Positions 1-33,835 of a DNA stretch of 64,000 bases are shown piece after piece. The translations under genes and the position numbers were made by a program. The first letter of the stretch is position 1, and each line of letters begins with the position of its first letter. Location of the stretch: the IMG/VR virus record IMGVR_UViG_3300044701_003160, positions 62,001 to 126,000 of that record. One strand, written 5' to 3'. Under the pieces are notes generated by a model that worked only from the letters and a program-made list of their open reading frames with translations, made no database searches and was not told the origin of the DNA.

Positions 1-817
1 CTGCTCCACGATCAGGTGTTACTATTATTTGATCACCTGGTTGATATCCAAATCCAGGATTATCAATATCTATATCTTCTATCTCAAGAATTACTGGATA
101 TATTGATGGTTGTATGGGTGGGATACTTGGTGGAATAAGTATGTCTTCTGGTTCTAATTCTGGAGTTACATTTGGTGGTACAACAACATAAGTTCCATCA
201 GGTTTTTGAATTAGACCCTGCTCTGGTCTTTTAATTACCCTACCACCACCACTATAACTGCCATCTGGAGCAGCAAGATATCCATCACCAGGTGCTTTAA
301 TTTTTATTCGAGTAACACTTCCATTACTTATTTCTGTTTGCAATTTACTTCCAGATCCCTTTCCAGACTGATCAACAAGTTGTGCGAAGGGTGGTGAGGT
401 ATAATTTTTTCCACCATTAACAATATCAAATCCAATAACTCCAGAAGAAACTGGACTTATAATTGTATTTGCCTGTACACCTAAACCTTCCCCACCAAAA
501 ATATTTAAAATTGGAGGTCCAGAGGGTTTTGCTCCTGTATCGCAAGGAGATGATGTTGCCAAATCGTTAGATGGAACTAAAGCATTAACTTGACTTATTG
601 TTAATTCTTGTTGAATCCTATTCTTATCTTGAAAATAAAAAAGTTGTGATGGATTTGCGGCCGCGATTTTATTTGCTTCACTTCTTGTCACATCATTTAC
701 TCTCATTTCATCAATATCATAAAAAGAAACTCTTATAGGATCATTTTTAAATCCATTAAATTCTTTTCTTTTTTTATCTTGACGATCTACAAATTCCTCT
801 CTAAGTAATTCTGTCAT
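1..817 (-). CDS. Partial baseplate hub-associated protein (likely C-terminal part of cyanophage gp5), runs off window edge
   Basis: Not in ORF track; manual translation from ATG at 817 (MTELLREEFVDRQ...) is open to base 1 and has Gly-rich motifs (DIVNGGKNYTSPP, IKAPGDGY, DIDNPGFGYQPGD); start overlaps upstream stop (ATGA). Confidence 0.6.
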   Translation of the reverse strand, partial: MTELLREEFVDRQDKKRKEFNGFKNDPIRVSFYDIDEMRVNDVTRSEANKIAAANPSQLFYFQDKNRIQQELTISQVNALVPSNDLATSSPCDTGAKPSGPPILNIFGGEGLGVQANTIISPVSSGVIGFDIVNGGKNYTSPPFAQLVDQSGKGSGSKLQTEISNGSVTRIKIKAPGDGYLAAPDGSYSGGGRVIKRPEQGLIQKPDGTYVVVPPNVTPELEPEDILIPPSIPPIQPSIYPVILEIEDIDIDNPGFGYQPGDQIIVTPDRGA

Positions 818-2187
818 TTGAAAGCAGTACTATAGTCTGGTTGATTTGAAGAACTTCCATTTCCAGATCCATAAGAGAATACTGGATTTGGTCCAATTAA
901 CTTATCAAAAGAAACCTGAGGATCTCCACCCTGAGAGAATGCTCCCGCCAAATTAATTTCTTGTTGTTGAGGACATGCTGCATCATCATCACATTTGAAA
1001 AAGTTAAGAATACCATTTGCAAAATCTAATGCATTAAATATAGAATCTATGGCACCAGTTACAAGACCAACACCCTGAGAAAATAATGCAATTGCAGTTT
1101 GTACTGCATTTGTAATTTGATCTAAAATACCAAAGTTATTTAATAAGTCAGATACAAAACTTTCAACAAAACAAAATGCAGTATCAATAAGTTTATCAAG
1201 TAAACCTGATAATATATTTCCAATTAAACCTGGAAGTTGTCTTACTAATTTATTAAACAAACAAGAAAGAAGATTGGTTCCTTCATTTATTTTCTTCATA
1301 AATTTTGGCATCTCACTTGGAAATAGAAAAGGCAATACCTTTTTTGCAGAATCGGAAACTACATTATAAGCATAACCACGAATACTATCAAATAAACTTT
1401 TTACATATCCTGTAATATCGCCAGTTGCAATATCTAAAACTTTCTGAATAAATTTTTCTCTATCAGGATCTCCACCACCAAAAAGTTCTGCAATCGTATC
1501 ATAATCTTTAATATCATTCAGTAGATTTTGAATTGTTGTTTGAATTCCCTTGAAAGGACTATTATCAGTTTTACAGGGACTTGCGAGTGGTGTTGGTTTT
1601 TTCCTATCAAGATCTTGTTCTGTCCAAGCTTGAACTGCACTGTCACTTAAATGAATTTTATCACCAATTGATTGAATTACTTTCCAATATTCTTGAGTTC
1701 CTATTAAATTGGTTGGGACAAATGCACCTCTTTCTGGTGTTCCTTCTTTATAAGTTTGATTAAAGAGTTGACCACCACCTATTTCACCTTTTGGTTGTTC
1801 TTTTGGAACATCATTATTGGAGTTAATTAATACTCCATCAATATAAGGCTCTTGTCCTGCCATTCCATCTAAGAACCATCCAGTTACAATCGTACCAGAA
1901 GAAAGTGCAGGAGTGTCATGAAATCCACCAAGACCAGAACCTGCAGTAACTGGCATAACCACATTTGCCATAGGCAACTGTTCGTCAGGAAGATCCTGAG
2001 TATTTGCAGAATGCAATCCAAAATATCTTATGCGATATCGATATCCCCATCCTTTTTGTTGTTCTGCTTCACTAAAAAGTTCGTCCTCAATATTTTCCTG
2101 CCAAGATACATCAGAAACTACTCTACCAAACCATCTTGGTACAGAAGAAACTGTATTTAAATCAAAATTTCCAGAATATTCACTCAT
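814..2187 (-). CDS. Baseplate hub gp5 N-terminal (OB-fold) portion
   Basis: WFGRVV...RYRIRYFGLH...LPDEQLPMANVVMPVT...G.IVTGWFLDG...PYIDG matches the T4 gp5 N-terminal pattern; baseplate context. Confidence 0.75.
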   Translation of the reverse strand: MSEYSGNFDLNTVSSVPRWFGRVVSDVSWQENIEDELFSEAEQQKGWGYRYRIRYFGLHSANTQDLPDEQLPMANVVMPVTAGSGLGGFHDTPALSSGTIVTGWFLDGMAGQEPYIDGVLINSNNDVPKEQPKGEIGGGQLFNQTYKEGTPERGAFVPTNLIGTQEYWKVIQSIGDKIHLSDSAVQAWTEQDLDRKKPTPLASPCKTDNSPFKGIQTTIQNLLNDIKDYDTIAELFGGGDPDREKFIQKVLDIATGDITGYVKSLFDSIRGYAYNVVSDSAKKVLPFLFPSEMPKFMKKINEGTNLLSCLFNKLVRQLPGLIGNILSGLLDKLIDTAFCFVESFVSDLLNNFGILDQITNAVQTAIALFSQGVGLVTGAIDSIFNALDFANGILNFFKCDDDAACPQQQEINLAGAFSQGGDPQVSFDKLIGPNPVFSYGSGNGSSSNQPDYSTAFK

Positions 2188-2402
2188 CAGTCATCATACA
2201 TACGGCATTCGAGAGCATCTGGATTTGAATCACAGTAGAGTTCCAAGGGAGTTGGATCGTGTTCATCATCAGGATGTCTTTCTTGATACTTTTTAAGAGC
2301 ATCGAGTTCATCTTCCAAATGACGCCGACGTTGGCTGTTTGTATTGGGACTATCTAATTCGTCCTTATCATTATTAATGTGCTGCTGAAGTGTCCTATCC
2401 AT
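2187..2402 (-). CDS. cp12: CP12 Calvin-cycle inhibitor
   Basis: C-terminal DPTPLELYCDSNPDALECRMYDD CP12 signature; ATG at 2402 preferred to GTG at 2411. Confidence 0.9.
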   Translation of the reverse strand: MDRTLQQHINNDKDELDSPNTNSQRRRHLEDELDALKKYQERHPDDEHDPTPLELYCDSNPDALECRMYDD

Positions 2403-2445
2403 TTGGAACACGATGTTAATTGTTATTATTTATTATCATTTATAC

Positions 2446-3759
2446 TTATTTTCTCCCAATTGATTCTCTTACAAGATTGAGTCTTGTATAACATCCATTT
2501 TTTGTTATATGATTACACAAATCTGCAATCATATAAACTCCACTTACTTTTTGACTTACAAGTTTTGTGGGATTACTAGAAATCTCTGGGAAATCACAGT
2601 AAACTAAATCTCCAGCACGAAGATCGAAGTCTCCTGGAATTGCGATTGAAAGTTTAGTAGAGAAAAGATTATTATATCTCATATAAGATTGTCTTAAAAT
2701 CTCATCATTATTATAGTTTATCTCTTTTGATTTTGGAAGTTGAGACTTTAAATCTTTTCCTTCAACCAAAGCACCTTGGTCATCAAATTTAAAAGATCTT
2801 CTTGATGTTTTATTTTGGATATCTAAGTCTTTTGCAATTACAGGTTGTTCTTTTCCACCAATATTATTTTCTTTAAATTGTTCTTTAGAATCAAAATCAT
2901 TCTTACGATATTTACTTTGATAAGTGTTTACTGCATTAAGTTCTGATTTTAATTGAGATCCTGTAGTTAATATATTTTTAAGATCCAAAGAACTCTCAAA
3001 GGAATATTGTAAAATTTTTGCATCATAAGTTGGTGGAATTTCTCCGATTATATTATTAAATATCAATCTCCTTTTTGGTTTTTGCTCAAACAGTTTATCA
3101 ATTGACTTGAATTTATATCCCTCATAAGTTTCATAAAAGAAAAATCCTGCAAGTTTTCCTTTTGAGTCTGCAACATCAGGTACAGATCTTGGTGCTAACC
3201 ATGCAGATTTATAAAAAGGTTTTTCAACATTCCCAATAAAACTTAGATTGTTTAGTGTAGTATCAATATCAATTTCTTTTTGTGTCTTTAAAACCTCTGT
3301 TAAAATTTTATTTACTGAATCGGATATTTTTCCATCATATCTTTTTTTAACCCGATATTCCACTAACTCATTATCAATTGCTTCCTTAGTGAAAAGATCG
3401 ACTGTAAATGTGACTTTGTTTGTTGTACTTACGGTTTGTCTTGGTTCTTTAATTCGCAAGTGCTTAGAACCAAGAAGTGAGAGTGTTTTATCATATCCAT
3501 CAGTCATCTTAAGTTCAACTTTTTCACCTACAGTAAGTTTAAGACCTTCCTCTTCAGTAACTGCAGAACCTTCTTCTTTTCGATATCCAGTATCTGCAAA
3601 TGTTGCATTAACTCTAATAGTAGGATCTAAAATACTCTCATAATAATTAAGTTCAACAATACCCCCCGACATATCAACTTTAGGTCTACCATAATTTGAA
3701 TAAAATTCAAATAAATCAATTTGGGCTTGGCCGCCTTGTGCTGCAATATTTGCTGGCAT
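2446..3759 (-). CDS. Putative baseplate hub protein (gp27-like)
   Basis: 437 aa, next to gp5; ELNYYESILDP..., FFFYETYEGYKFKS, IAIPGDFDLRAGD, SGVYMIADLCNHI resemble contractile-tail hub proteins. Confidence 0.5.
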   Translation of the reverse strand: MPANIAAQGGQAQIDLFEFYSNYGRPKVDMSGGIVELNYYESILDPTIRVNATFADTGYRKEEGSAVTEEEGLKLTVGEKVELKMTDGYDKTLSLLGSKHLRIKEPRQTVSTTNKVTFTVDLFTKEAIDNELVEYRVKKRYDGKISDSVNKILTEVLKTQKEIDIDTTLNNLSFIGNVEKPFYKSAWLAPRSVPDVADSKGKLAGFFFYETYEGYKFKSIDKLFEQKPKRRLIFNNIIGEIPPTYDAKILQYSFESSLDLKNILTTGSQLKSELNAVNTYQSKYRKNDFDSKEQFKENNIGGKEQPVIAKDLDIQNKTSRRSFKFDDQGALVEGKDLKSQLPKSKEINYNNDEILRQSYMRYNNLFSTKLSIAIPGDFDLRAGDLVYCDFPEISSNPTKLVSQKVSGVYMIADLCNHITKNGCYTRLNLVRESIGRK

Positions 3760-3760
3760 T

Positions 3761-6700
3761 TTATCCTCTACTTAAACTTAAATCAGGCATACTACTATTT
3801 ACTGGAATTGGAACTATCATCGGAAAGTCAATTGATTTTGAAGATGATGGTTTCTCAATATATTGAATCATTGGTTGAATTGCAATCATCATTCCAGATC
3901 CTGGAGTCTCATAAGAAGCAAATGAGTTTGGTATTGTGCGATTTGGTTTTGATGGTGCTATGAGACCACCATCTTGTAATTTTCCTTGTACTTGTATTCC
4001 ACTTTGTCTTAATTGTTCTGCTGTGGAAGGTCTACCCCCAATTTGTGTTGGTTTTTGTGGAGAATTTGATGCCTGACTTTGGGCACTATTATATCTTTGC
4101 TTTTCTTCTGGAGTCCACTTTTTAGCTTTCCATATTCCCTTTTCTATAATACCTTCTTTTCCTCCTTTCATAGCTAATTTATATGTTATCGATGGTTTAA
4201 CATTATCACCAAACAAGAAAGTTTTATCCGCTTTTGAATTTAAAGTTTGCCAATTGGATACCGTATTTCCATTAGGATCATCATATTCAAAGTGTAAATG
4301 TGAACCAGTTGACCCCCCTGTACTACCAACAGTTCCAATCACACTTCCTGCTTTTACTTTACTCCCAACACCAACTTTTCTATCAGATAAATGCGCGTAT
4401 ATTGATTTTGATCTATCAGAATGTTGAATCTCGATCAAGTTTCCATATCCACTAGTCATCGAACCATTAACCTCAGATCTAGTAACCACCCCATCTCTAG
4501 TAATAGTAATAGGAGTTCCATCCGGCATAGGATAATCATTTCCAGAATGCATTTTCCATTCACCAGTTATTGGATGTTTTCTATCACCCGCTTTAGAACC
4601 AAGTTTTGTACTTGGTAGTACTCCACCAGTAAAAGAAGAAGAACTTTCACCTTCTCTAAATTTTGCAGTTCCGTCAGGTGCTTTTGGAACCTTTGATAGA
4701 TATTCTCTATGCTTTTTGGGACCAGTACTACTTTGAATATATTCTGCAGGTCTTTCCCACTTTCTCATCCACCAGTCGGCAGCTTCTTCCGATGAAGAAA
4801 ACTTTTTAGAAAGATATTCTTGTCCAGGTTCTCCGGGTTCTTTTAAAGCATAATCTACTTGTGCCTTCCAATTTTTTTCCCAATCCGGAACTGCTCTCAA
4901 AAATGCTTCTTTTCTTCCCGCAGAAGAATATTGAAATAAACCAATTCCAGGTCCATCAGGTTGTTTTGCATCTACTCTGAATCCACTTTCTCTAAAAATA
5001 TTAGCCATAATTCCAAGTGCCTGAGCGTCACTCATTTTTTTCTCATTAATTAAATACTCATAAATTTCTTTCTGTATTCCTGATGGTGCATATCCACCAT
5101 ATTCTCCACCAGAAGTTCCAGTAAAACCATTACCAGGGCCCTGCATATCATCCTTAGTAGTGTCTTTCTTCAACATCAATTCTTTTTCAATACTCTGAAT
5201 TGCCTCATTAACTCTTTGATCAATTGTAGGACCAATAAGTTTTGCAAGTAAATCACCGGTACTCATATCTCCATAAGATCCTCTCAATTCTCTTGAAGGA
5301 ACTGTACCTCCTTCAGCAAATCCTCTGATTTGAGACATCAAGGAACTCATACTCTTATTTGTTCTTTGATTTGCAAGAGTATCTGCAACATAACCAATAC
5401 TATCAAAGAATGCCTTAAAAACTTTTTTATCTGGTTTTTGTCCTAACGCCATATCAATACCAGAACTCATCACACCAAGAATTCCTTTTGCAAGAGTTTC
5501 GTCAGACTTTAATGTACCCGACATTTTCTTGAGAGTATCAAAGGCAGTTAGATCCTTTTTTTCTCCATCAAATAAAGTTGATAACCAACCTCCAGAAGGT
5601 CTTGTATATTTCTTACTTTCATCTTGCGGTTTTGCATAAAATTCTTTTATTTTCTTTTCTCCACCAACATCTTTACCTGGTTGAGTTTTAGGTAGAGAAA
5701 CTCTTGGTGGTTTTTTTCTTGTTGGAGTAATTGATCTTCTTGATGGACCACCAACTGGTCTTCCACCTCTTGTAGTTCCACCACCTTGATATCTACGAAC
5801 AACTCTTCCTCCACCAGAAAACATCGGAAGCCAAGGAGCATAAGTTTCTTTTATTACCTTTCCAATATCACGAATCAAAAGTAAAATATCAATACCAATA
5901 CTGACTCCACCAAAAATAGCAGCAGCAGGAACACCAACTCCAGTTAATGCAAGAATCGCAGTAATCGTATCAAGGCCTGCAGATACTGATGCTAATGCTC
6001 CACCAATATTATCTCCCGATTTAAACCTTGCTGCTGCGTCAGCTGCTCCAACTGCTGCACCAAGACCAGGAACTGCCGCGCCAGCAAACTTACTTAAAGG
6101 ACCTTTAAGTTTTGCAAATGGTCCTTTGAATAAATTATTCCACCATCCAGGAACTTTACCACCTTTTCCAGTTGTTACTTTCGGTTTTCCTGTTGGTTTC
6201 TTTCCACCTCTACCTTCAGTTACTTTTGGTTTTCCTCCTTTTTTACCTTTCTGTGGTTCAGGTGCGCTTTTCTTTCTCCACTTATTATACTCGTCAACCG
6301 CAGCACCACCAATATCAGCAGCAAGAACACCTACAATAATCGAAGCATTTACAAAAGTATTAAATTGTTTTTCTAACTTATCAAATTCAGTTTGATAATT
6401 ACCACCTACTCCTGCCTTTGCGCTTGCGATGAATCCTAATGTTTTTTCTTTTAAGTCTCCACCAAACTTCACGAGACTCATAAACCCATCAAAGAGTTTA
6501 CCAAACAATCCTTCACCAAACTTATAAATTCCACCTACGATTTTTGCAAACCCTTCAAGTTTTGGTAGAAACTCAAGTATCTTTGGAAGCAACCATCCAA
6601 GAGCAGTAAAGAATAAAAATCTCTTTACACGATCAAGAAATCCTAAAGAAGGTGCAGATATTCCGGGAAGTCTTAATCCTTTTGATTGTGGTGTTTCTAG

Positions 6701-6958
6701 TTTCTTTTCTGCAGCATCAAAATCTTGTTTTTCTTTTTCTTTTCTTTTAACCTCTGCTTTCTTTTGAGATACAATTAAATCTGACTTTAAGAACTTTTCA
6801 ATATTAACTAACTTACCACCAACATCATTACTCTTAACTATTGCTACACTCTTTTTATTAATATTAATTGGAGAAATTAGTCCAGACTTTCCAACTTTTG
6901 TAATTGCCGTAGACTTTGCTGATGGAAGTAGTTTAGAAGGATTTGTAATTTTTGCCAT
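3761..6958 (-). CDS. Tape-measure-like virion protein with phage-tail-lysozyme and M23 peptidase domains
   Basis: AQALGIMANIFRESGF...GIGLFQYS (tail lysozyme); HSGNDY...GYGNLIEIQH...YAHLS...STGSHLHFE (M23); Ala/Gly-rich hydrophobic middle region. Confidence 0.7.
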   Translation of the reverse strand: MAKITNPSKLLPSAKSTAITKVGKSGLISPININKKSVAIVKSNDVGGKLVNIEKFLKSDLIVSQKKAEVKRKEKEKQDFDAAEKKLETPQSKGLRLPGISAPSLGFLDRVKRFLFFTALGWLLPKILEFLPKLEGFAKIVGGIYKFGEGLFGKLFDGFMSLVKFGGDLKEKTLGFIASAKAGVGGNYQTEFDKLEKQFNTFVNASIIVGVLAADIGGAAVDEYNKWRKKSAPEPQKGKKGGKPKVTEGRGGKKPTGKPKVTTGKGGKVPGWWNNLFKGPFAKLKGPLSKFAGAAVPGLGAAVGAADAAARFKSGDNIGGALASVSAGLDTITAILALTGVGVPAAAIFGGVSIGIDILLLIRDIGKVIKETYAPWLPMFSGGGRVVRRYQGGGTTRGGRPVGGPSRRSITPTRKKPPRVSLPKTQPGKDVGGEKKIKEFYAKPQDESKKYTRPSGGWLSTLFDGEKKDLTAFDTLKKMSGTLKSDETLAKGILGVMSSGIDMALGQKPDKKVFKAFFDSIGYVADTLANQRTNKSMSSLMSQIRGFAEGGTVPSRELRGSYGDMSTGDLLAKLIGPTIDQRVNEAIQSIEKELMLKKDTTKDDMQGPGNGFTGTSGGEYGGYAPSGIQKEIYEYLINEKKMSDAQALGIMANIFRESGFRVDAKQPDGPGIGLFQYSSAGRKEAFLRAVPDWEKNWKAQVDYALKEPGEPGQEYLSKKFSSSEEAADWWMRKWERPAEYIQSSTGPKKHREYLSKVPKAPDGTAKFREGESSSSFTGGVLPSTKLGSKAGDRKHPITGEWKMHSGNDYPMPDGTPITITRDGVVTRSEVNGSMTSGYGNLIEIQHSDRSKSIYAHLSDRKVGVGSKVKAGSVIGTVGSTGGSTGSHLHFEYDDPNGNTVSNWQTLNSKADKTFLFGDNVKPSITYKLAMKGGKEGIIEKGIWKAKKWTPEEKQRYNSAQSQASNSPQKPTQIGGRPSTAEQLRQSGIQVQGKLQDGGLIAPSKPNRTIPNSFASYETPGSGMMIAIQPMIQYIEKPSSSKSIDFPMIVPIPVNSSMPDLSLSRG

Positions 6959-6962
6959 CTAC

Positions 6963-9341
6963 TTATCCTCTCAGACCGTAGATTGATGCATACTCTGCTC
7001 TATTATTACTTGGAGCAACTGCAGAAAAATTAGGAACTTCAGATGCACCAGCAAGTCCTGCTGCTCTTGGTCTTGATGATCCACCTCCAGATGCAACCAT
7101 AGGTGGTAGAGTCATCATACCGTTCATTCCCGATCCACCAAAAGTTTTGTATGGAGTAATTGATCTATATCCTCTTCTTGCTGCTTCTGAATTTGGATCC
7201 AGTTTAGCCTGAATTAAATTTGCAATCTCAGATGCTCCTCTTTCAGTTGCTTGTTTAGTAAAAATATATTTGGATTCACCTGGTTGAACTGCAACATTAA
7301 TTAATTGTCTATCGGCTGTCGCTCCAGGAATATTCATTCCAGTATTTTCCTTAATTTCTCCACCTCGCATAAATGGAAGCATAGATGGCATAAAGTTAAG
7401 AGCAGTACCTAGTGTTTTCATTATGCCTAAAGATTTTTTCTTTGCTTTTGGTTTTGCAGGTGCTTCTAGGTTTAACGCGCCGGAGTTGAGTTTCTCTCTA
7501 TATTGATTGAACCTAGAAACTCTATCTTCATATCCATTAATTCCTTTTGGACTGGAAGCAGATGGATTGTTTATTGCTCTAGATGCAGAAAAAACATCAT
7601 TCCAATTATTACCAACTGCAGGTCTTACATTTTCTTTCCAATACATCACAGCAATTTTTGCAGCAATATCACTATTTGTTGCAAGATCTGGATTATTTAC
7701 CAAATCAATTCCCAATTTATCTCCATACTTTTTATAATTATAATCGTGAGTTAATTGGATATATCCTCTACCTTTGTATTTTTTTCCACCACTATAACTG
7801 CTACTTCCACCACCAAGTTCAGTACTCCACTTATATCCTCCAGTTTCGTGAGACATTTGAGATAAGAAAGATGCTAATTCTAATCCCTTTATTCCAGCAG
7901 AGTTGGCGGCTTTTATTAAAGGAAGATCTCCAAACTTGGAAGTTCCAGATAATGGTGATTTTGGTTTTCCTACCATTCCTCCAATATTAAATCTTGGTAT
8001 CATTCCGCCAAGATTAAATCCCCCACCAAATCCAGGAAATCTAAGATTACTCATATTCACGGATCCTGGTTTTCTTCCCGCAAGATATTGTGGTATGTTT
8101 AATGGTTGCCCAGTACGTCTATCAACATATCTTTGTCCAATATCTTGTTGATCTTTTTCTGTGAGAATTGCTTCTCCAGTTTTTGCAGCAATCAGAGTAT
8201 CGTCAGATCCAGCACCAGCAATTGGAACTCCTTGTGAGAAATCCATTCCACCATATGGATTAAATCCTCCCATTTTAAAACTAGGAATCATTCCCCCAAA
8301 ATTAAATTTTGGAACCCGAGTATCTTGTGCTTTATCTACAGATTTTTGTGCTTCATTAAGTTCTGGATTTGTTTTTGGAATTAATCCTGACTCTGGTGTT
8401 TCTTTATCTGTAAATAAATTTCCAATCTCTCTACTTACTAAAGGTGCTGCAGCAAGTGCTAAGAACGCAAGTTTTTTATTTTTTCTTATGAACCCAAATA
8501 TTTTTGGAATATTCATTCCAATCGCAATAATCATTCGGGTAACGCCTTTCAGCAGTCCACGAACTAATTTTCCAAAACCAGTTCCAAATAAAATATAAAG
8601 TCCAGCAAGTGCAGGCCAGTGATCCGATAAGAATTCTATAAAAGAATTAAACTTATTTTGATTTCCTTTATTACTCATCCACTCCATAAAGGAAGTAAAT
8701 CCTCTTCCTAGTAAAGTGAAAAATATGAATTTAAAAATACGATCAATAATTGCCTGAAAAGGTGAAAGTAATTTTTTAGTGGTGGATACTATTGTACCTA
8801 TTCCTTTTTTAAATCCTTCTAATGCAGATTCTTTTTTTCCTCTTCCTTCTGTTTCTTTATCTCTTCTTTCCTTATCAGATTGTTTCTGATCAAATTTAAA
8901 TTTAGAACTTAAAATAGTTAAAATTGAATCTAAAGTATTTTTAATACCATCAGTTTCAAAATTAGAAGATACTGATATTGCATTTGTGGTTGATGCAAGT
9001 TTTCCTTTCTGCGCTTTTATAATTGCTGCAGAAGATGGAAGTTTTTTTTGTCCGGGAATACTAGAAGTCTTAGTAAAACTAACTTTTGTTTTTGCTTTTT
9101 TAACCTTGAATCTAAGACCTTTATCTTTTAAGGTACGAACTCTTTTAAATTCATTTCTTAAAAGTTCATCTTCTTCTCTTGGAAGTTCCTTTCCCGCAAG
9201 TCTTGCTATCGCTAACTTCTTTTTAATAATATCGTGATATGTTTGATAATCTAATTCGACGCCAACATTTAATCCAAGTAACCTGAGAATTACTTCATCA
9301 ATTGATTCAGATTTTACTTTGTTACTTGGATTACTAACCAT
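6963..9341 (-). CDS. Tape-measure-like virion protein with GH19 (chitinase/lysozyme-like) domain
   Basis: FLSQMSHETGG...YKGRGYIQLTHDYNY...AVMYWK...NGYEDRVSRF is GH19; repeated FNxGG motifs. Confidence 0.7.
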   Translation of the reverse strand: MVSNPSNKVKSESIDEVILRLLGLNVGVELDYQTYHDIIKKKLAIARLAGKELPREEDELLRNEFKRVRTLKDKGLRFKVKKAKTKVSFTKTSSIPGQKKLPSSAAIIKAQKGKLASTTNAISVSSNFETDGIKNTLDSILTILSSKFKFDQKQSDKERRDKETEGRGKKESALEGFKKGIGTIVSTTKKLLSPFQAIIDRIFKFIFFTLLGRGFTSFMEWMSNKGNQNKFNSFIEFLSDHWPALAGLYILFGTGFGKLVRGLLKGVTRMIIAIGMNIPKIFGFIRKNKKLAFLALAAAPLVSREIGNLFTDKETPESGLIPKTNPELNEAQKSVDKAQDTRVPKFNFGGMIPSFKMGGFNPYGGMDFSQGVPIAGAGSDDTLIAAKTGEAILTEKDQQDIGQRYVDRRTGQPLNIPQYLAGRKPGSVNMSNLRFPGFGGGFNLGGMIPRFNIGGMVGKPKSPLSGTSKFGDLPLIKAANSAGIKGLELASFLSQMSHETGGYKWSTELGGGSSSYSGGKKYKGRGYIQLTHDYNYKKYGDKLGIDLVNNPDLATNSDIAAKIAVMYWKENVRPAVGNNWNDVFSASRAINNPSASSPKGINGYEDRVSRFNQYREKLNSGALNLEAPAKPKAKKKSLGIMKTLGTALNFMPSMLPFMRGGEIKENTGMNIPGATADRQLINVAVQPGESKYIFTKQATERGASEIANLIQAKLDPNSEAARRGYRSITPYKTFGGSGMNGMMTLPPMVASGGGSSRPRAAGLAGASEVPNFSAVAPSNNRAEYASIYGLRG

Positions 9342-9513
9342 TGGCTCTTTGCTGTGCCCGTTGTTCTTCTTCTTCCAGATGCTGTTTTAGTAAAATCACA
9401 TAAATGTCCCTTTCCCAAGGTATCATATTTTCAATCTCTGTTAATGAATATTTATGATACTGCATTAAGGAAAAATTTAACTTGAAGTAACTCTCCAAGT
9501 CCATATGACTCAT
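9334..9513 (-). CDS. Baseplate hub assembly catalyst gp51
   Basis: 59 aa, below track cutoff: MSHMDLESYFKLNFSLMQYHKYSLTEIENMIPWERDIYVILLKQHLEEE...; LMQYHKYSLTEIENMIPWER motif; follows gp26. Confidence 0.85.
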   Translation of the reverse strand: MSHMDLESYFKLNFSLMQYHKYSLTEIENMIPWERDIYVILLKQHLEEEEQRAQQRANG

Positions 9514-9515
9514 TC

Positions 9516-10235
9516 CTATGCGAAAAAACTTGATAACCCTTCTAGAACAACTTCACTTTCAACTTCTGTCTTTGGATTTTTAACTTTAATTGTATGAGAA
9601 AGTTTAGGCATCGTTTCAAAGAACTTTTCAATTTCTTTGAATTGTGATGAGTTCATTTGATCTAAAAACTCCATTAATTCTTTCTTAGTTACATCTGCTG
9701 CAACCCAGACTTCATCCTCAGTATAAATTTTATCTACACAAGAACCAATCAATTCAAATGATTGATCCATCGTACCATCAGCAGAAAGATCAAAGTTACT
9801 CTTAATAAACTGTTCTAATGATGGATACTTCATCTCCATCACGATTGAATCATCAAGTTTAATTCTATTATTATGTTCTGAATTTTTTTGAACTTGAATA
9901 TCATCTACAAGAATCTTAACAGGAACAGTAGTCTCTCCATCATCCGGACAGATGATATTCACTTCAATCTCTTCTCCAACTGACTTACCGCGAATGTTGA
10001 GAAAGAGATATTCAATATCAAAAGTAGGAAGAGACTCTACTTTAATTCCTTTAGTCTCAATACAATTTTTAATGACTGTTTTGATCGCGGTAGTAATCTG
10101 TTTGGTATCTTCAGATTCTAATGCAATCACTAATAGTTTTTCTTCTTTTACTAGAAAGGGTCTGTATTTGATTGTTTGTCCAGTTGAAGGCAACTCAAGT
10201 TCATAAGTTGGTGTAGAAATCTTAGGTAAAGGCAT
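9516..10235 (-). CDS. Baseplate hub subunit gp26
   Basis: MPLPKISTPTYELELPSTG..IKYRPFLVKEEK...FDIEYLFLNIRGKSVGE. Confidence 0.9.
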   Translation of the reverse strand: MPLPKISTPTYELELPSTGQTIKYRPFLVKEEKLLVIALESEDTKQITTAIKTVIKNCIETKGIKVESLPTFDIEYLFLNIRGKSVGEEIEVNIICPDDGETTVPVKILVDDIQVQKNSEHNNRIKLDDSIVMEMKYPSLEQFIKSNFDLSADGTMDQSFELIGSCVDKIYTEDEVWVAADVTKKELMEFLDQMNSSQFKEIEKFFETMPKLSHTIKVKNPKTEVESEVVLEGLSSFFA

Positions 10236-32508: not shown

Positions 32509-32672
32509 TGAGAAAGAAACTTCTTCCCATTCTCATTCTTCTGAGACTTCTAATAAATGATGGTCTCTTTATGGAAAACCGAAGGACTCAACCTAAACCT
32601 CAACCACCAGAAGTTCGTGCTGCTATTCGTAGAACTTGGAAAAGAGGTAGGAAGTTATTTACGACTCCATAA
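32508..32672 (+). CDS. Small hypothetical protein (54 aa)
   Basis: MRKKLLPILILLRLLINDG...; start overlaps upstream stop. Confidence 0.45.
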   Translation: MRKKLLPILILLRLLINDGLFMENRRTQPKPQPPEVRAAIRRTWKRGRKLFTTP

Positions 32673-33128
32673 AGTACCTTCAGCAACTCTTCTTCTCAAT
32701 AACCCTTTTTCTACTTTAGTTCCAGGATTACGATAAAGTTCTAATGCCCCCGGAACTTTAGACCATTCTTTATTTCTAAGGACTTTTGTTATGGTATTAA
32801 AATTGGGATTCCCATAAAAATCAGCCCCAAGATTATAAGCAAAAGAAAGAAGTGCTCCTTGTTGATTCTCATTCATTTCGTTCCAATAAGGGATTTTTCG
32901 AAGTGAAGGAAGAAACCGATTTTCAAGATCAAATAGCAATAACCTATTTGCATATTCTTGAGTGATTATTTTTCCCATCTTAAAAGCAGATCCATCAAAA
33001 TCCTTCGTACTTCCCCATCCTACTGTGATTGGAAGTTTTCCAGTTAGTGGATCTGGATATGAGTGTAAATGACATCCTTCAAATTCTTTAATTAGAAAGA
33101 CACCACTTTGAGGAATTTGTGATGTCAT
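32655..33128 (-). CDS. GH24 lysozyme (endolysin)
   Basis: IKEFEGC.L.SYPDP..G..PITVGWGST...ALLSFAYNLG...GLLRRR.AE. Confidence 0.9.
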   Translation of the reverse strand: MTSQIPQSGVFLIKEFEGCHLHSYPDPLTGKLPITVGWGSTKDFDGSAFKMGKIITQEYANRLLLFDLENRFLPSLRKIPYWNEMNENQQGALLSFAYNLGADFYGNPNFNTITKVLRNKEWSKVPGALELYRNPGTKVEKGLLRRRVAEGTLWSRK

Positions 33129-33130
33129 TT

Positions 33131-33835
33131 CTACTTTTTTGCGTAAAAAATTCTACCCCAACCAGTCTTATCCTTATTATTTTCTAACCAACGATACTGA
33201 AGATCGGAACGCTTATAAACCGCACCTTTACCGTTAGTTACTGCACCTGTATATCCATCGTTCAAAGATCCATAGGGGTCATTAATAATATAATCTGTTC
33301 CTTTTTTACCAATTACTACACACATGTGACCGCCAGTAGGAGCAGATAAAGTACCGCGATGAAGAATCCCGATAACAACGGGTCTCCCAGCGGCAAGCTC
33401 ACGATCAAGATCAGCGAAACCAAGATTATACTTAAACTCAGACTTAATTCCATAATCAACAAGAACTTTTGTCTGAACTGAGTGATCAGTCGTATCTCCT
33501 GTTGCGAGAACTTTCTTAAGATAGGCATCGTCGCCCTTTGCTCCTGGAAGTGTTCCTGGTTTGAAGTACTCAAGACACATTGCACAAGAAGAAGAATTGC
33601 AAGTTCTATCTGGTTGAGTATAGTTATCTACCTGAGGAAAATAAGGAACGTTCAGAATTCCTGGTTGGGCTGGGGGTTCTTGTTTGGTTCTGTAGATACT
33701 AACCCAAGTACTGGAGTCATCCATTAACTCGGGTACTTTTGCAAGTAAATCTTTTTCAAGTTGCTCTACTGATGCAACGTGATTTGGATTCTTAGGATCG
33801 TAATGTAAAAAGAAATTGTGAAGATCAATTTGCAT
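33131..33835 (-). CDS. Peptidase C39-like protein
   Basis: LNVPYFPQ.DN...RTCNSSSCAM...GGHM.VVIG...IINDPYG. Confidence 0.8.
   Translation of the reverse strand: MQIDLHNFFLHYDPKNPNHVASVEQLEKDLLAKVPELMDDSSTWVSIYRTKQEPPAQPGILNVPYFPQVDNYTQPDRTCNSSSCAMCLEYFKPGTLPGAKGDDAYLKKVLATGDTTDHSVQTKVLVDYGIKSEFKYNLGFADLDRELAAGRPVVIGILHRGTLSAPTGGHMCVVIGKKGTDYIINDPYGSLNDGYTGAVTNGKGAVYKRSDLQYRWLENNKDKTGWGRIFYAKK

What the first reader, a model, noticed from the sequence alone, without database searches (positions are those of the whole stretch)
3761..9341. Two paralogous tape-measure-like proteins carrying three different peptidoglycan hydrolases
Seen: both have a charged helix ending in LE, then DR(V/I)xxF(L/I)FFTxLG and GG-containing motifs. 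One carries GH19; the other carries tail lysozyme plus M23. They lie between gp51 and the hub gene, where T4 has gp27-29, while the gp5 ORF seen here shows no lysozyme motif. Inference: a heteromeric tape measure or ejected complex supplies wall-degrading activity for thick cyanobacterial peptidoglycan, with swappable enzyme cassettes.
Basis: partly seen in the sequence, partly recalled or inferred. Interest (0 to 1): 0.6.

Follow-up and report, generated by a model that had tools for sequence, protein, structure and literature searches.

The report
Paired tape-measure-like cyanophage tail proteins
Two neighbouring genes of an uncultured T4-like cyanophage encode related virion proteins that most likely act as the tail's missing tape measure and injection proteins, and they carry interchangeable cell-wall-cutting enzymes that T4 keeps on its tail spike.

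Summary
Window 6963-9341(-) encodes protein A (792 aa, GH19). Window 3761-6958(-) encodes protein B (1065 aa, phi29-gp13-like lysozyme plus M23 peptidase), with catalytic motifs present. Their N-terminal modules are homologous (BLASTP E 4e-7; profile-profile E 6.7e-17). They lie in a tight gp26 / gp51 / A / B / gp27-like hub / CP12 / gp5 block of a complete 219 kb T4-like cyanomyovirus. The gp5 region has no lysozyme domain, and a separate small GH24 lysozyme sits elsewhere in the window.

The pair is present in every related locus I recovered that is long enough to show it (420+420 to 1565+1456 aa). Evidence for a tape-measure role:
- A-family proteins carry a motif that outside cyanophages hits only annotated tape measure proteins.
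- The genome has no gp29 or other recognisable tape measure.
- Orthologs were found in virions by mass spectrometry in two isolates.
- In S-CREM2 (418 nm tail) A and B are 630-720 aa longer than in its 129-138 nm-tailed relatives, while three other giant structural proteins keep their size.

Enzyme cassettes are very diverse but occur in a minority of orthologs.

Not shown: that A and B bind each other, that both set tail length, or any link to thick cyanobacterial walls. Verdict: a new variant of a known kind (tape measures carrying wall hydrolases), so far annotated as hypothetical proteins or endolysins.

The parts
9516..10235 (-). gp26-like baseplate hub assembly protein (239 aa); first gene of the tight hub block
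   Evidence: PF12322 E 1.9e-76, phrog_150; BLASTP to T4 gp26 E 1e-7, to T4 gp51 only 0.016
9334..9513 (-). gp51-like hub assembly catalyst (59 aa, C-terminal part of T4 gp51); overlaps the start of A by 8 nt
   Evidence: phrog_634 E 6.1e-29; ORF list; the short cyanophage gp51 is noted in PMC3037559
6963..9341 (-). Protein A, 792 aa: tape-measure-like virion protein with a GH19 cassette
   Evidence: (phrog_35029)
9102..9314 (-). A residues 10-80: confident small helical N-terminal domain that B lacks; no family
   Evidence: AlphaFold pLDDT 86-96; the BLASTP alignment with B starts at A residue 99
8676..8984 (-). A residues 120-222: module shared with B (charged helix, E-x-x-L-E at 171-175, then the hydrophobic D-x-I-x-x-F-I...L-G helix)
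   Evidence: hhalign E 6.7e-17; near-invariant columns; one continuous predicted helix 128-223
8415..8675 (-). A residues 223-309: further hydrophobic or amphipathic helices
   Evidence: helices 225-309; orthologs carry 0-7 TM-like segments here
8142..8324 (-). A residues 340-400: short F-x-x-G-G-x-I-P repeats and a divergent copy 1 of the tape-measure motif (core at 380-392)
   Evidence: profile of the motif hits TMPs
7467..7934 (-). A residues 470-625: GH19 glycoside hydrolase cassette, inserted between the two motif copies
   Evidence: Pfam; Foldseek GH19 hits including phage endolysins; catalytic motifs
7227..7379 (-). A residues 655-705: copy 2 of the tape-measure motif (core at 676-693)
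   Evidence: alignment A3; closest to the second copies in loci L007, L010 and L050
3761..6958 (-). Protein B, 1065 aa: paralogous tape-measure-like virion protein with a lysozyme + M23 cassette
   Evidence: (phrog_35997)
6566..6868 (-). B residues 31-131: module shared with A (E-x-x-L-E at 84-88, invariant)
6008..6265 (-). B residues 232-317: Lys/Gly/Pro-rich, predicted disordered linker
   Evidence: pLDDT 25-34, no secondary structure
5822..6007 (-). B residues 318-379: Gly/Ala-rich hydrophobic helices (membrane-insertion candidates)
   Evidence: hydropathy peaks up to 2.06; helices 321-379
5159..5731 (-). B residues 410-600: confidently folded helical domain with no recognised family
   Evidence: pLDDT up to 95; no Pfam hit; Atlas search gave no lead
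4679..5086 (-). B residues 625-760: PF18013 'phage tail lysozyme' domain
   Evidence: Pfam E 6.9e-20; matches the phi29 gp13 N-terminal domain (3csr, Z 5.9)
4259..4576 (-). B residues 795-900: M23 zinc endopeptidase domain
   Evidence: Pfam E 2e-25; PDB sequence hits E 2e-23; Z 12-15; metal ligands present
2446..3759 (-). gp27-like baseplate hub or 'tail protein' (437 aa); starts 1 nt after the stop of B
   Evidence: phrog_350 E 2.7e-75; 302 phage records, nearly all cyanophages
2187..2411 (-). CP12 auxiliary metabolic gene inserted between the hub and gp5
   Evidence: PF02672 E 4.4e-15; same position in S-SCSM1 and S-SM2
814..2187 (-). gp5-like central spike N-terminal part (457 aa) without a lysozyme domain
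   Evidence: phrog_1922 E 3e-48, no Pfam hit; the next ORF also has no Pfam hit
32655..33128 (-). Stand-alone GH24 phage lysozyme (157 aa): candidate lysis endolysin, separate from A and B
   Evidence: PF00959 E 6e-21; only hit for this family in the genome

Best explanation
A and B are a conserved, anciently duplicated pair of tail-lumen proteins of T4-like cyanophages. They take the place of T4 gp29, the tape measure and DNA-channel protein.

Proposed mechanism (inferred, not shown):
- They are made from the tightly packed hub operon gp26-gp51-A-B-gp27-like.
- They are built into the hub and the tail tube polymerises around them, so their length helps set tail length.
- On contraction they are expelled through the opened hub.
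- Their hydrolase cassettes then cut peptidoglycan locally. In this phage these are GH19 on A and a phi29-gp13-like lysozyme plus M23 endopeptidase on B.
- Their Gly/Ala-rich hydrophobic helices insert into the cytoplasmic membrane to make the DNA conduit.

Shown here: the domain content, the paralogy, the synteny, the tape-measure motif, virion presence in orthologs, and elongation in a long-tailed relative.
Inferred: the location in the lumen, the ruler function of both proteins, ejection, and the order of events.
For: 1. Synteny. The pair sits between gp51 and the gp27-like hub in this window and in every related locus that is long enough: 36 complete pairs plus the isolates B3, S-SCSM1, P-SSM2, S-SM2, P-TIM68, S-CREM2, S-H34, S-N03 and S-PM2.
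2. No other ruler. T4 gp29, phrog_1283 and PF10145 find nothing in the complete 219 kb genome. By established knowledge, every long-tailed phage needs a tape measure.
3. Tape-measure signature. The ~45-residue motif of A orthologs (core D-T-V-P-A-M-L-T-P-G-E-F-V) matches, outside cyanophages, only features annotated as tape measure protein in Gordonia, Mycobacterium, Clavibacter, Achromobacter and Microcystis phages. It also matches the solved TMP of mycobacteriophage Douge (8zdo, E 1.5e-11, two copies), weakly matches lambda gpH, and matches at least 10 TMP PHROG families. Enzyme-free 420-aa orthologs of both A and B hit TMP PHROGs.
4. Virion presence. S-SCSM1 ORF213/214 and S-CREM2 ORF208/209 (73 and 71 unique peptides) were detected by mass spectrometry.
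5. Length scaling. S-CREM2 (418 nm tail) has A/B of 1565/1456 aa, against 936/735 and 933/722 aa in S-H34 (129 nm) and S-N03 (138 nm), with the same Pfam enzymes. Its other giant structural proteins have like-sized orthologs: ORF122 in both relatives (1937 vs 1954 aa in S-H34), ORF124 in both (2668 vs 2479 and 2490), and ORF130 in S-H34 only (1640 vs 1795). The extra length of B is at least 26 tandem 13-residue repeats.
6. A and B lengths co-vary across 41 phages (r 0.76).
7. Hydrophobic segments occur as in T4 gp29. T4 gp29 was recently reported to form the membrane channel.
8. A separate GH24 lysozyme exists for lysis, and gp5 lacks one.
Against: - No detectable homology to T4 gp29.
- The window's own two motif copies are divergent and alone hit no TMP family.
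- Only the N-terminal 200-300 residues are predicted as long helices. Much of both proteins is low-confidence or disordered.
- The length arithmetic is not that of a simple helical ruler. S-CREM2's extra ~285 nm would need about 1900 helical residues, but A and B gain only 629 and 721. Each alone would need 0.40-0.45 nm per residue, which is impossible; the sum would need 0.21 nm per residue.
- The length correlation is not corrected for phylogeny.
- Virion evidence is from orthologs, not this uncultured phage, and mass spectrometry does not say tail or head. The S-CREM2 authors proposed capsid encapsidation.
- Folded enzyme domains must somehow fit a tube lumen about 4 nm wide.
- A-B binding is unsupported.
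Confidence: 0.62

Rival explanations
1. Only one of the two proteins is the true ruler, most likely A, which carries the tape-measure motif. B is a hub- or tip-associated lysin and pilot protein that shares just an N-terminal anchoring module. It would be functionally nearer to T4 gp28 plus the gp5 lysozyme, or to phi29 gp13.
For: - In the A/B clade of this window the motif is found in A only.
- Homology between A and B is limited to about 100 columns.
- B carries the phi29-gp13-like cassette typical of tail-tip enzymes.
- The enzyme-free B ortholog also hits a 'tail associated lysin' PHROG.
Against: - In cluster C phages B also has the motif near its C-terminus (S-CREM2 B 1345; A/B BLAST E 4.6e-12).
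- B lengthens even more than A in the long-tailed S-CREM2, by tandem repeats.
- The enzyme-free B ortholog hits TMP PHROGs (phrog_167 E 1.4e-7).
- A and B lengths co-vary.
Confidence: 0.22
2. A and B are head-packaged ejection proteins, comparable to podovirus internal proteins or T4 Alt, that leave with the DNA. They are not tail-lumen rulers. The conserved E-x-x-L-E would then be a maturation or targeting signal.
For: - The S-CREM2 authors suggested encapsidation.
- M23-bearing internal proteins exist in cyanopodophage A4 (9k2v).
- The S-PM2 ortholog of A carries an ADP-ribosyltransferase domain, as does the head-packaged T4 Alt.
- E-x-x-L-E is invariant.
Against: - The genes sit inside the hub assembly block, not the head module.
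- The motif is specific to tape measures.
- Length tracks tail length, with similar reported capsid sizes (96 vs 97-98 nm).
- The phage would be left with no tape measure at all.
- L is at P2, not P3, so the site does not fit the T4 L/I-x-E protease rule (my own knowledge of T4 gp21 specificity).
Confidence: 0.1
3. They are ordinary endolysins for lysis from within, as several GenBank records annotate them.
For: Annotations 'endolysin', 'chitinase' and 'lysozyme' in S-CREM2, S-H34, S-N03 and S-SCSM1; the catalytic domains have their catalytic motifs.
Against: - Most orthologs have no hydrolase domain.
- The proteins are 420-1565 aa with hydrophobic helices and repeats.
- They are abundant in purified virions.
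- They are encoded in the hub block.
- The genome has a separate 157-aa GH24 lysozyme next to a C39-like peptidase.
Confidence: 0.03

Closest known systems
Siphophage tape measure proteins with embedded wall hydrolases (mycobacteriophage TM4-type TMPs with Rpf/M23 motifs, T5 Pb2, staphylococcal phage TMPs; recalled from the literature), and the solved TMP of mycobacteriophage Douge (8zdo)
   Same: - Long tail-module protein next to the hub gene.
- Hydrophobic segments.
- Internal peptidoglycan hydrolase domains.
- The shared G-G-x-V-P-G...D-x-V-P-A-x-L-x-x-G-E-F-V motif, which occurs in two copies in Douge gp16.
- Length related to tail length.
   Different: - Here the host virus is a T4-like contractile-tailed phage.
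- There are two paralogous genes instead of one.
- Only the N-terminal third is clearly helical.
- The enzymes are optional and extremely varied between close relatives.
T4 gp29 (tape measure, hub subunit and membrane channel), with gp27, gp28 and gp5
   Same: - Same genomic neighbourhood (gp26/gp51 ... gp27) and the same virus lineage.
- A hydrophobic segment in mid-protein.
- Expected role in hub nucleation, tube length and DNA channel formation.
   Different: - No detectable sequence similarity.
- T4 has one gene of 590 aa and puts its lysozyme on gp5. Here gp5 has none, and two proteins of 792 and 1065 aa carry three hydrolase domains.
- The gene order differs: A and B precede the gp27-like gene.
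phi29 gp13 tail-tip cell-wall-degrading enzyme
   Same: The same two-domain cassette as B residues 625-900: an N-terminal PF18013 lysozyme-like domain followed by an M23 endopeptidase (3csq aligned across 624-920, Z 9.2 but rmsd 19.7 A, so the two domains match separately).
   Different: gp13 is a free-standing 365-aa tail-tip protein of a podophage. Here the cassette is embedded in a 1065-aa protein with a paralogous N-terminal module and membrane-type helices.
Anabaena myophage A-1(L) hub gp15
   Same: A cyanobacterial myophage that carries several wall hydrolase domains (lysozyme, endoglucanase, M23-type peptidase) in the central tail device rather than on a T4-type gp5.
   Different: In A-1(L) the enzymes are domains of the hub protein, and a single separate 689-aa TMP (gp13) fills the 104.5 nm tail. 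Here the hub is enzyme-free and the TMP-like pair carries them.

Membership tests
Tape measure protein (functional class) | Encoded in the tail module directly beside the hub or distal-tail genes | tested here: met
   gp26-gp51-A-B-gp27-like-gp5, with gaps of 1-4 nt or overlaps; conserved in all related loci examined
Tape measure protein (functional class) | Sequence similarity to established TMP families | tested here: met
   The motif profile hits 8zdo TMP at E 1.5e-11. tblastn hits outside cyanophages are all annotated TMPs. At least 10 TMP PHROGs are hit. Caveat: this is motif-level only, and the window's own copies are divergent.
Tape measure protein (functional class) | Protein length scales with tail length | tested here: inconclusive
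   Qualitatively yes: S-CREM2, 418 nm, 1565/1456 aa against S-H34, 129 nm, 936/735 aa, with other giant proteins unchanged. Quantitatively it does not fit 0.15 nm per residue for either chain. Only four isolates with tail lengths were compared.
Tape measure protein (functional class) | Virion component | tested here: met
   Mass spectrometry of the orthologs in S-SCSM1 and S-CREM2; not available for this uncultured phage
Tape measure protein (functional class) | Long helical or coiled-coil stretches and hydrophobic membrane-type segments | tested here: inconclusive
   A helices 128-309, B helices 46-231 and 321-379, with hydrophobic peaks; but more than half of each model is low-confidence or disordered
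Tape measure protein (functional class) | Occupies the tail-tube lumen; mutants change or abolish tail length | not testable with these tools
   Needs cryo-EM and genetics
T4 gp29 family (phrog_1283) | Detectable sequence homology to gp29 | tested here: not met
   No PHROG hit; hhalign probability below 2%; no match in the genome
Glycoside hydrolase family 19 | Pfam score above cut-off, two catalytic Glu residues and the GRG-x-IQ-[LI]-[ST] signature, GH19 fold | tested here: met
   52.1 bits against a cut-off of 25.5; E499, E508 and signature at 524; Foldseek GH19 probability 1.00. The local model is of modest quality.
Peptidase M23 (LytM type) | H-x3-D and H-x-H zinc motifs, M23 fold | tested here: met
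   89.2 bits against a cut-off of 28.7; H804, D808, H887, H889; Z up to 15.1
PF18013 phage tail lysozyme (phi29 gp13 N-domain) | Pfam score above cut-off; lysozyme-like fold with a catalytic Glu | tested here: met
   72.1 bits against a cut-off of 28.2; 3csr Z 5.9 over 627-767; Glu657 present. Catalysis was not assayed.

The most novel reading that the evidence does not exclude
T4-like cyanophages measure their tails with a two-component ruler. Two paralogous proteins together span the tube, in series or interleaved, partly through extended low-complexity or tandem-repeat segments rather than alpha-helix. The same two scaffolds act as modular delivery vehicles whose slots accept any wall hydrolase, and even cytoplasm-directed effectors such as the ADP-ribosyltransferase domain seen in S-PM2. 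Tail length and entry chemistry could then both evolve by cassette and repeat exchange in one of the ocean's most abundant virus groups.
Probability: 0.25. Interest if true: 0.75.

Novelty: new variant of a known kind. Interest (0 to 1): 0.55.

Why it matters
T4-like cyanomyoviruses are among the most abundant viruses in the ocean. In the records and papers I examined, their tape measure had not been named. The two genes are filed as hypothetical proteins, 'endolysins', 'chitinase' or 'non-structural virion-associated proteins', and their PHROG families have no function.

Assigning them as a paralogous tape-measure and ejection pair would:
- fill a hole in the T4-core comparison (gp27, gp28 and gp29 have no annotated counterparts in the records examined);
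- explain why cyanophage gp5 lacks lysozyme;
- give a direct, testable handle on tail-length control, through the repeat-expanded S-CREM2 proteins;
- identify a hypervariable entry-enzyme locus that may matter for host range and for annotating metagenomes.

Tried and rejected
- Megablast of the region against 50,697 phage records found nothing; the phage is only distantly related to isolates.
- hhalign of both ortholog profiles against T4 gp29, PHROG scans, and searches of the whole genome for gp29, phrog_1283 and PF10145 found no similarity. I therefore do not call A or B gp29 homologs.
- Complex prediction of A 120-310 with B 30-232 gave no verdict (score 0.00). This is neither for nor against binding.
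- ESM Atlas search with B 405-605 gave no usable lead.
- A scan for the T4 late-promoter motif found 7 sites against 6.7 expected, none in front of the block, so no claim on timing is made.
- tblastn with the minimal 420-aa A ortholog found only 14 cyanophage records. The family is too divergent for simple searches.
- I considered S-CREM2 ORF124 (2668 aa, which would fit 418 nm at 0.157 nm per residue) as a rival ruler. I rejected it because S-H34 and S-N03 have 2479 and 2490-aa orthologs with short tails. ORF122 has a like-sized S-H34 ortholog and a split open frame in S-N03; ORF130 matched S-H34 only, not S-N03. ORF85 (4971 aa fibre) could not be searched because of the size limit.
- I looked for the P-SSM2 tail length in PMC1079782; it is not given.
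- I considered the E-x-x-L-E as a T4-type prohead protease site. It does not fit L/I-x-E, so it is left unexplained.
- The reads tools and the large protein searches were not used. They were not needed for the claims made.

Full report
**What is there.** The window is positions 62001-126000 of a complete 219 kb IMG/VR virus. On hub-protein identity it is a T4-like cyanomyovirus (Kyanoviridae). Its nearest isolates are Synechococcus phages B3 and B23, at about 50% amino-acid identity. There is no nucleotide-level match to any deposited phage.

On the minus strand the genes run in this order:
- a tube-like protein (11078-10269);
- gp26-like (10235-9516);
- a 59-aa gp51-like ORF (9513-9334);
- protein A (9341-6963, 792 aa);
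- protein B (6958-3761, 1065 aa);
- a gp27-like hub (3759-2446);
- CP12 (2411-2187);
- gp5-like (2187-814).

From gp26 to the hub the genes are separated by 1-4 nt or overlap, so the layout looks like one translationally coupled hub-assembly block.

**Checking the observation.** All three enzyme calls hold above Pfam's curated cut-offs: GH19 in A, and PF18013 'phage tail lysozyme' plus M23 in B. The catalytic signatures are present. Structure predictions with ortholog alignments give matching folds. A matches GH19 chitinases and phage GH19 endolysins. B matches M23 at Z up to 15. The two-domain phi29 tail enzyme gp13 aligns across residues 624-920, so B's cassette has the gp13 architecture.

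The N-terminal resemblance between A and B is significant pairwise (E 4e-7). It is strong between family profiles (probability 98.8%, E 6.7e-17 over 100 columns). It covers a charged helix with a near-invariant E-x-x-L-E and the following hydrophobic helix.

gp5 has no lysozyme domain. The only GH24 lysozyme in the genome is a separate 157-aa gene at 32655-33128, next to a C39-like peptidase. The real gp51-like gene is the 59-aa ORF, which matches the C-terminal part of T4 gp51. That agrees with the known truncation of cyanophage gp51 (PMC3037559).

**The pair is a family feature.** I used gp26 to fetch 80 related loci and added nine isolates. Every locus that is long enough has the same two large genes between gp51 and the hub gene. 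There are 36 complete pairs, sized from 420+420 to 982+1074 aa, and 1565+1456 aa in S-CREM2. In P-SSM2 they are the clusters T4-GC 13 and 14.

**Enzyme cassettes across orthologs.** Pfam scans give the following.
- 53 A orthologs: GH19 (3), GH24 (2), SleB-like Hydrolase_2 (2), PF18013, glucosaminidase, SLT and DPBB (1 each).
- 32 B orthologs: PF18013 (6), M23 (4), glucosaminidase (2), DPBB, SLT_3, Hydrolase_2 and SLT (1 each).
- Isolates add VanY in S-SCSM1 B, and an ADP-ribosyltransferase domain plus PF18013 in S-PM2 A.

So 'swappable cassettes' is correct. But the enzymes are accessory: most orthologs, including the smallest, have none. The conserved core is the N-terminal module, hydrophobic Gly/Ala-rich helices and C-terminal motifs.

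**Why tape measure.**
1. The complete genome has no gp29, phrog_1283 or PhageMin_Tail match. A contractile tail needs a ruler.
2. Many A orthologs contain a well-conserved ~45-residue motif. Outside cyanophages a 70-residue piece containing it matches only genes annotated as tape measure protein. These are 88 Gordonia, 6 Mycobacterium, Clavibacter, Achromobacter and Microcystis Mic1 records, among others.
3. A profile of the motif hits the solved TMP of mycobacteriophage Douge (8zdo) at E 1.5e-11, in two copies. It hits lambda gpH (8iyk) and another TMP (8vjh) weakly. It also hits at least ten TMP PHROGs.
4. Enzyme-free 420-aa orthologs of both A and B hit TMP PHROGs on their own.
5. The window's A has two divergent copies of the motif flanking the GH19 cassette.
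6. The motif's structural role is unknown. Only residues 1658-1699 of the Douge TMP are resolved.
7. Orthologs are virion proteins by mass spectrometry: S-SCSM1 ORF213/214 (PMC9602691) and S-CREM2 ORF208/209, with 73 and 71 unique peptides (PMC10665884). Those authors treated them as non-structural lysis proteins.

**A natural experiment.** S-CREM2 has a 418 nm tail. Its cluster-C relatives S-H34 and S-N03 have 129 and 138 nm tails.
- A and B are 1565/1456 aa in S-CREM2, against 936/735 and 933/722 aa, with the same Pfam enzymes: GH19 in A and GH24 in B.
- Three other giant structural proteins of S-CREM2 have like-sized orthologs in the short-tailed S-H34: ORF122, 1937 vs 1954 aa; ORF124, 2668 vs 2479 aa (2490 in S-N03); ORF130, 1640 vs 1795 aa, with no match in S-N03.
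- The extra length in B is at least 26 tandem 13-residue repeats. In A it includes a ~220-residue Ser/Thr/Asn-rich tract.
- Across 41 phages the A and B lengths co-vary (r 0.76; not corrected for phylogeny).

**What does not fit neatly.** There is no similarity to T4 gp29. Only the first 200-300 residues are predicted as long helices. The S-CREM2 arithmetic excludes a simple helical ruler:
- The extra ~285 nm is matched by only +629 and +721 residues.
- That is 0.40-0.45 nm per residue for either chain alone, which is physically impossible.
- It is 0.21 nm per residue for both chains in series.

If A and B are the ruler, they probably act together and partly in extended conformation. That is inference only. 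The complex prediction for the N-terminal modules gave no verdict. Mass spectrometry cannot distinguish tail from head. The 'thick cyanobacterial wall' rationale is untested. The hub family and the motif also occur in Pelagibacter phage records, which I did not follow up.

**Comparison with known systems.** This works like siphophage TMPs that carry wall hydrolases, and like T4 gp29 as a ruler and channel. The enzyme cassette of B is that of phi29 gp13. The Anabaena myophage A-1(L) solves the same problem differently, with enzymes on the hub and a single TMP. The differences here are a T4-type myovirus, two paralogous carriers, no lysozyme on gp5, and extreme cassette turnover. My literature searches found no paper calling these proteins tape measures.

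**Verdict.** This is a new variant of a known kind, of moderate interest.

Noticed in passing
window 32655-33835 (-): A stand-alone GH24 phage lysozyme (157 aa) lies directly downstream of a 234-aa Peptidase_C39_2-like protein. This is a possible two-enzyme lysis pair, separate from the virion hydrolases.
   Followed up: partly
window 5159-5731 (-), B residues 410-600: A confidently predicted helical domain (pLDDT up to 95) with no Pfam family and no Atlas lead. It might be a further enzyme or a hub-binding domain.
   Followed up: partly
window 9102-9314 (-), A residues 10-80: A small, confident helical N-terminal domain present in A but absent from B. In S-PM2 the equivalent N-terminal slot holds an ADP-ribosyltransferase domain (L107:1066-4566, residues 66-218; PF01129, 25.1 bits against a cut-off of 22.3).
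   Followed up: partly
A residues 171-175 and B residues 84-88 (window about 8817-8831 and 6695-6709): E-x-x-L-E is invariant or nearly invariant in both families across all orthologs. It does not fit the T4 prohead-protease L/I-x-E rule, and its role (processing site or assembly contact) is unexplained.
   Followed up: no
L088:9727-14097 (S-CREM2 gp209) and L088:5026-9723 (gp208): gp209 holds at least 26 tandem 13-residue F-Q-Q-S-M-G-S-V-A-P-x-G-G repeats (residues 773-1296). gp208 holds a ~220-residue Ser/Thr/Asn-rich tract (529-750). Both are in the cyanomyovirus with the longest known tail.
   Followed up: partly
window 9334-10235 (-): T4 gp26 and gp51 fall in the same PHROG (phrog_150). 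Here the 239-aa protein is gp26-like, and only a 59-aa remnant corresponds to the C-terminus of T4 gp51.
   Followed up: yes
window 2187-2411 (-): A CP12 auxiliary metabolic gene is wedged between the hub and gp5 genes inside the structural block, as in S-SCSM1 and S-SM2.
   Followed up: yes
window 2-2187 (-) and genome 61744-62817: The gp5-like ORF is only 457 aa and matches just the first half of the gp5 PHROG. A 357-aa ORF with no family overlaps its stop by 4 nt. Relatives have a single ORF of 560-920 aa here, so gp5 may be split in this phage.
   Followed up: partly
L107:11280-12374 (S-PM2): S-PM2 has a gene annotated 'base plate lysozyme' right after gp5, so some relatives keep yet another hydrolase in this block.
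   Followed up: no
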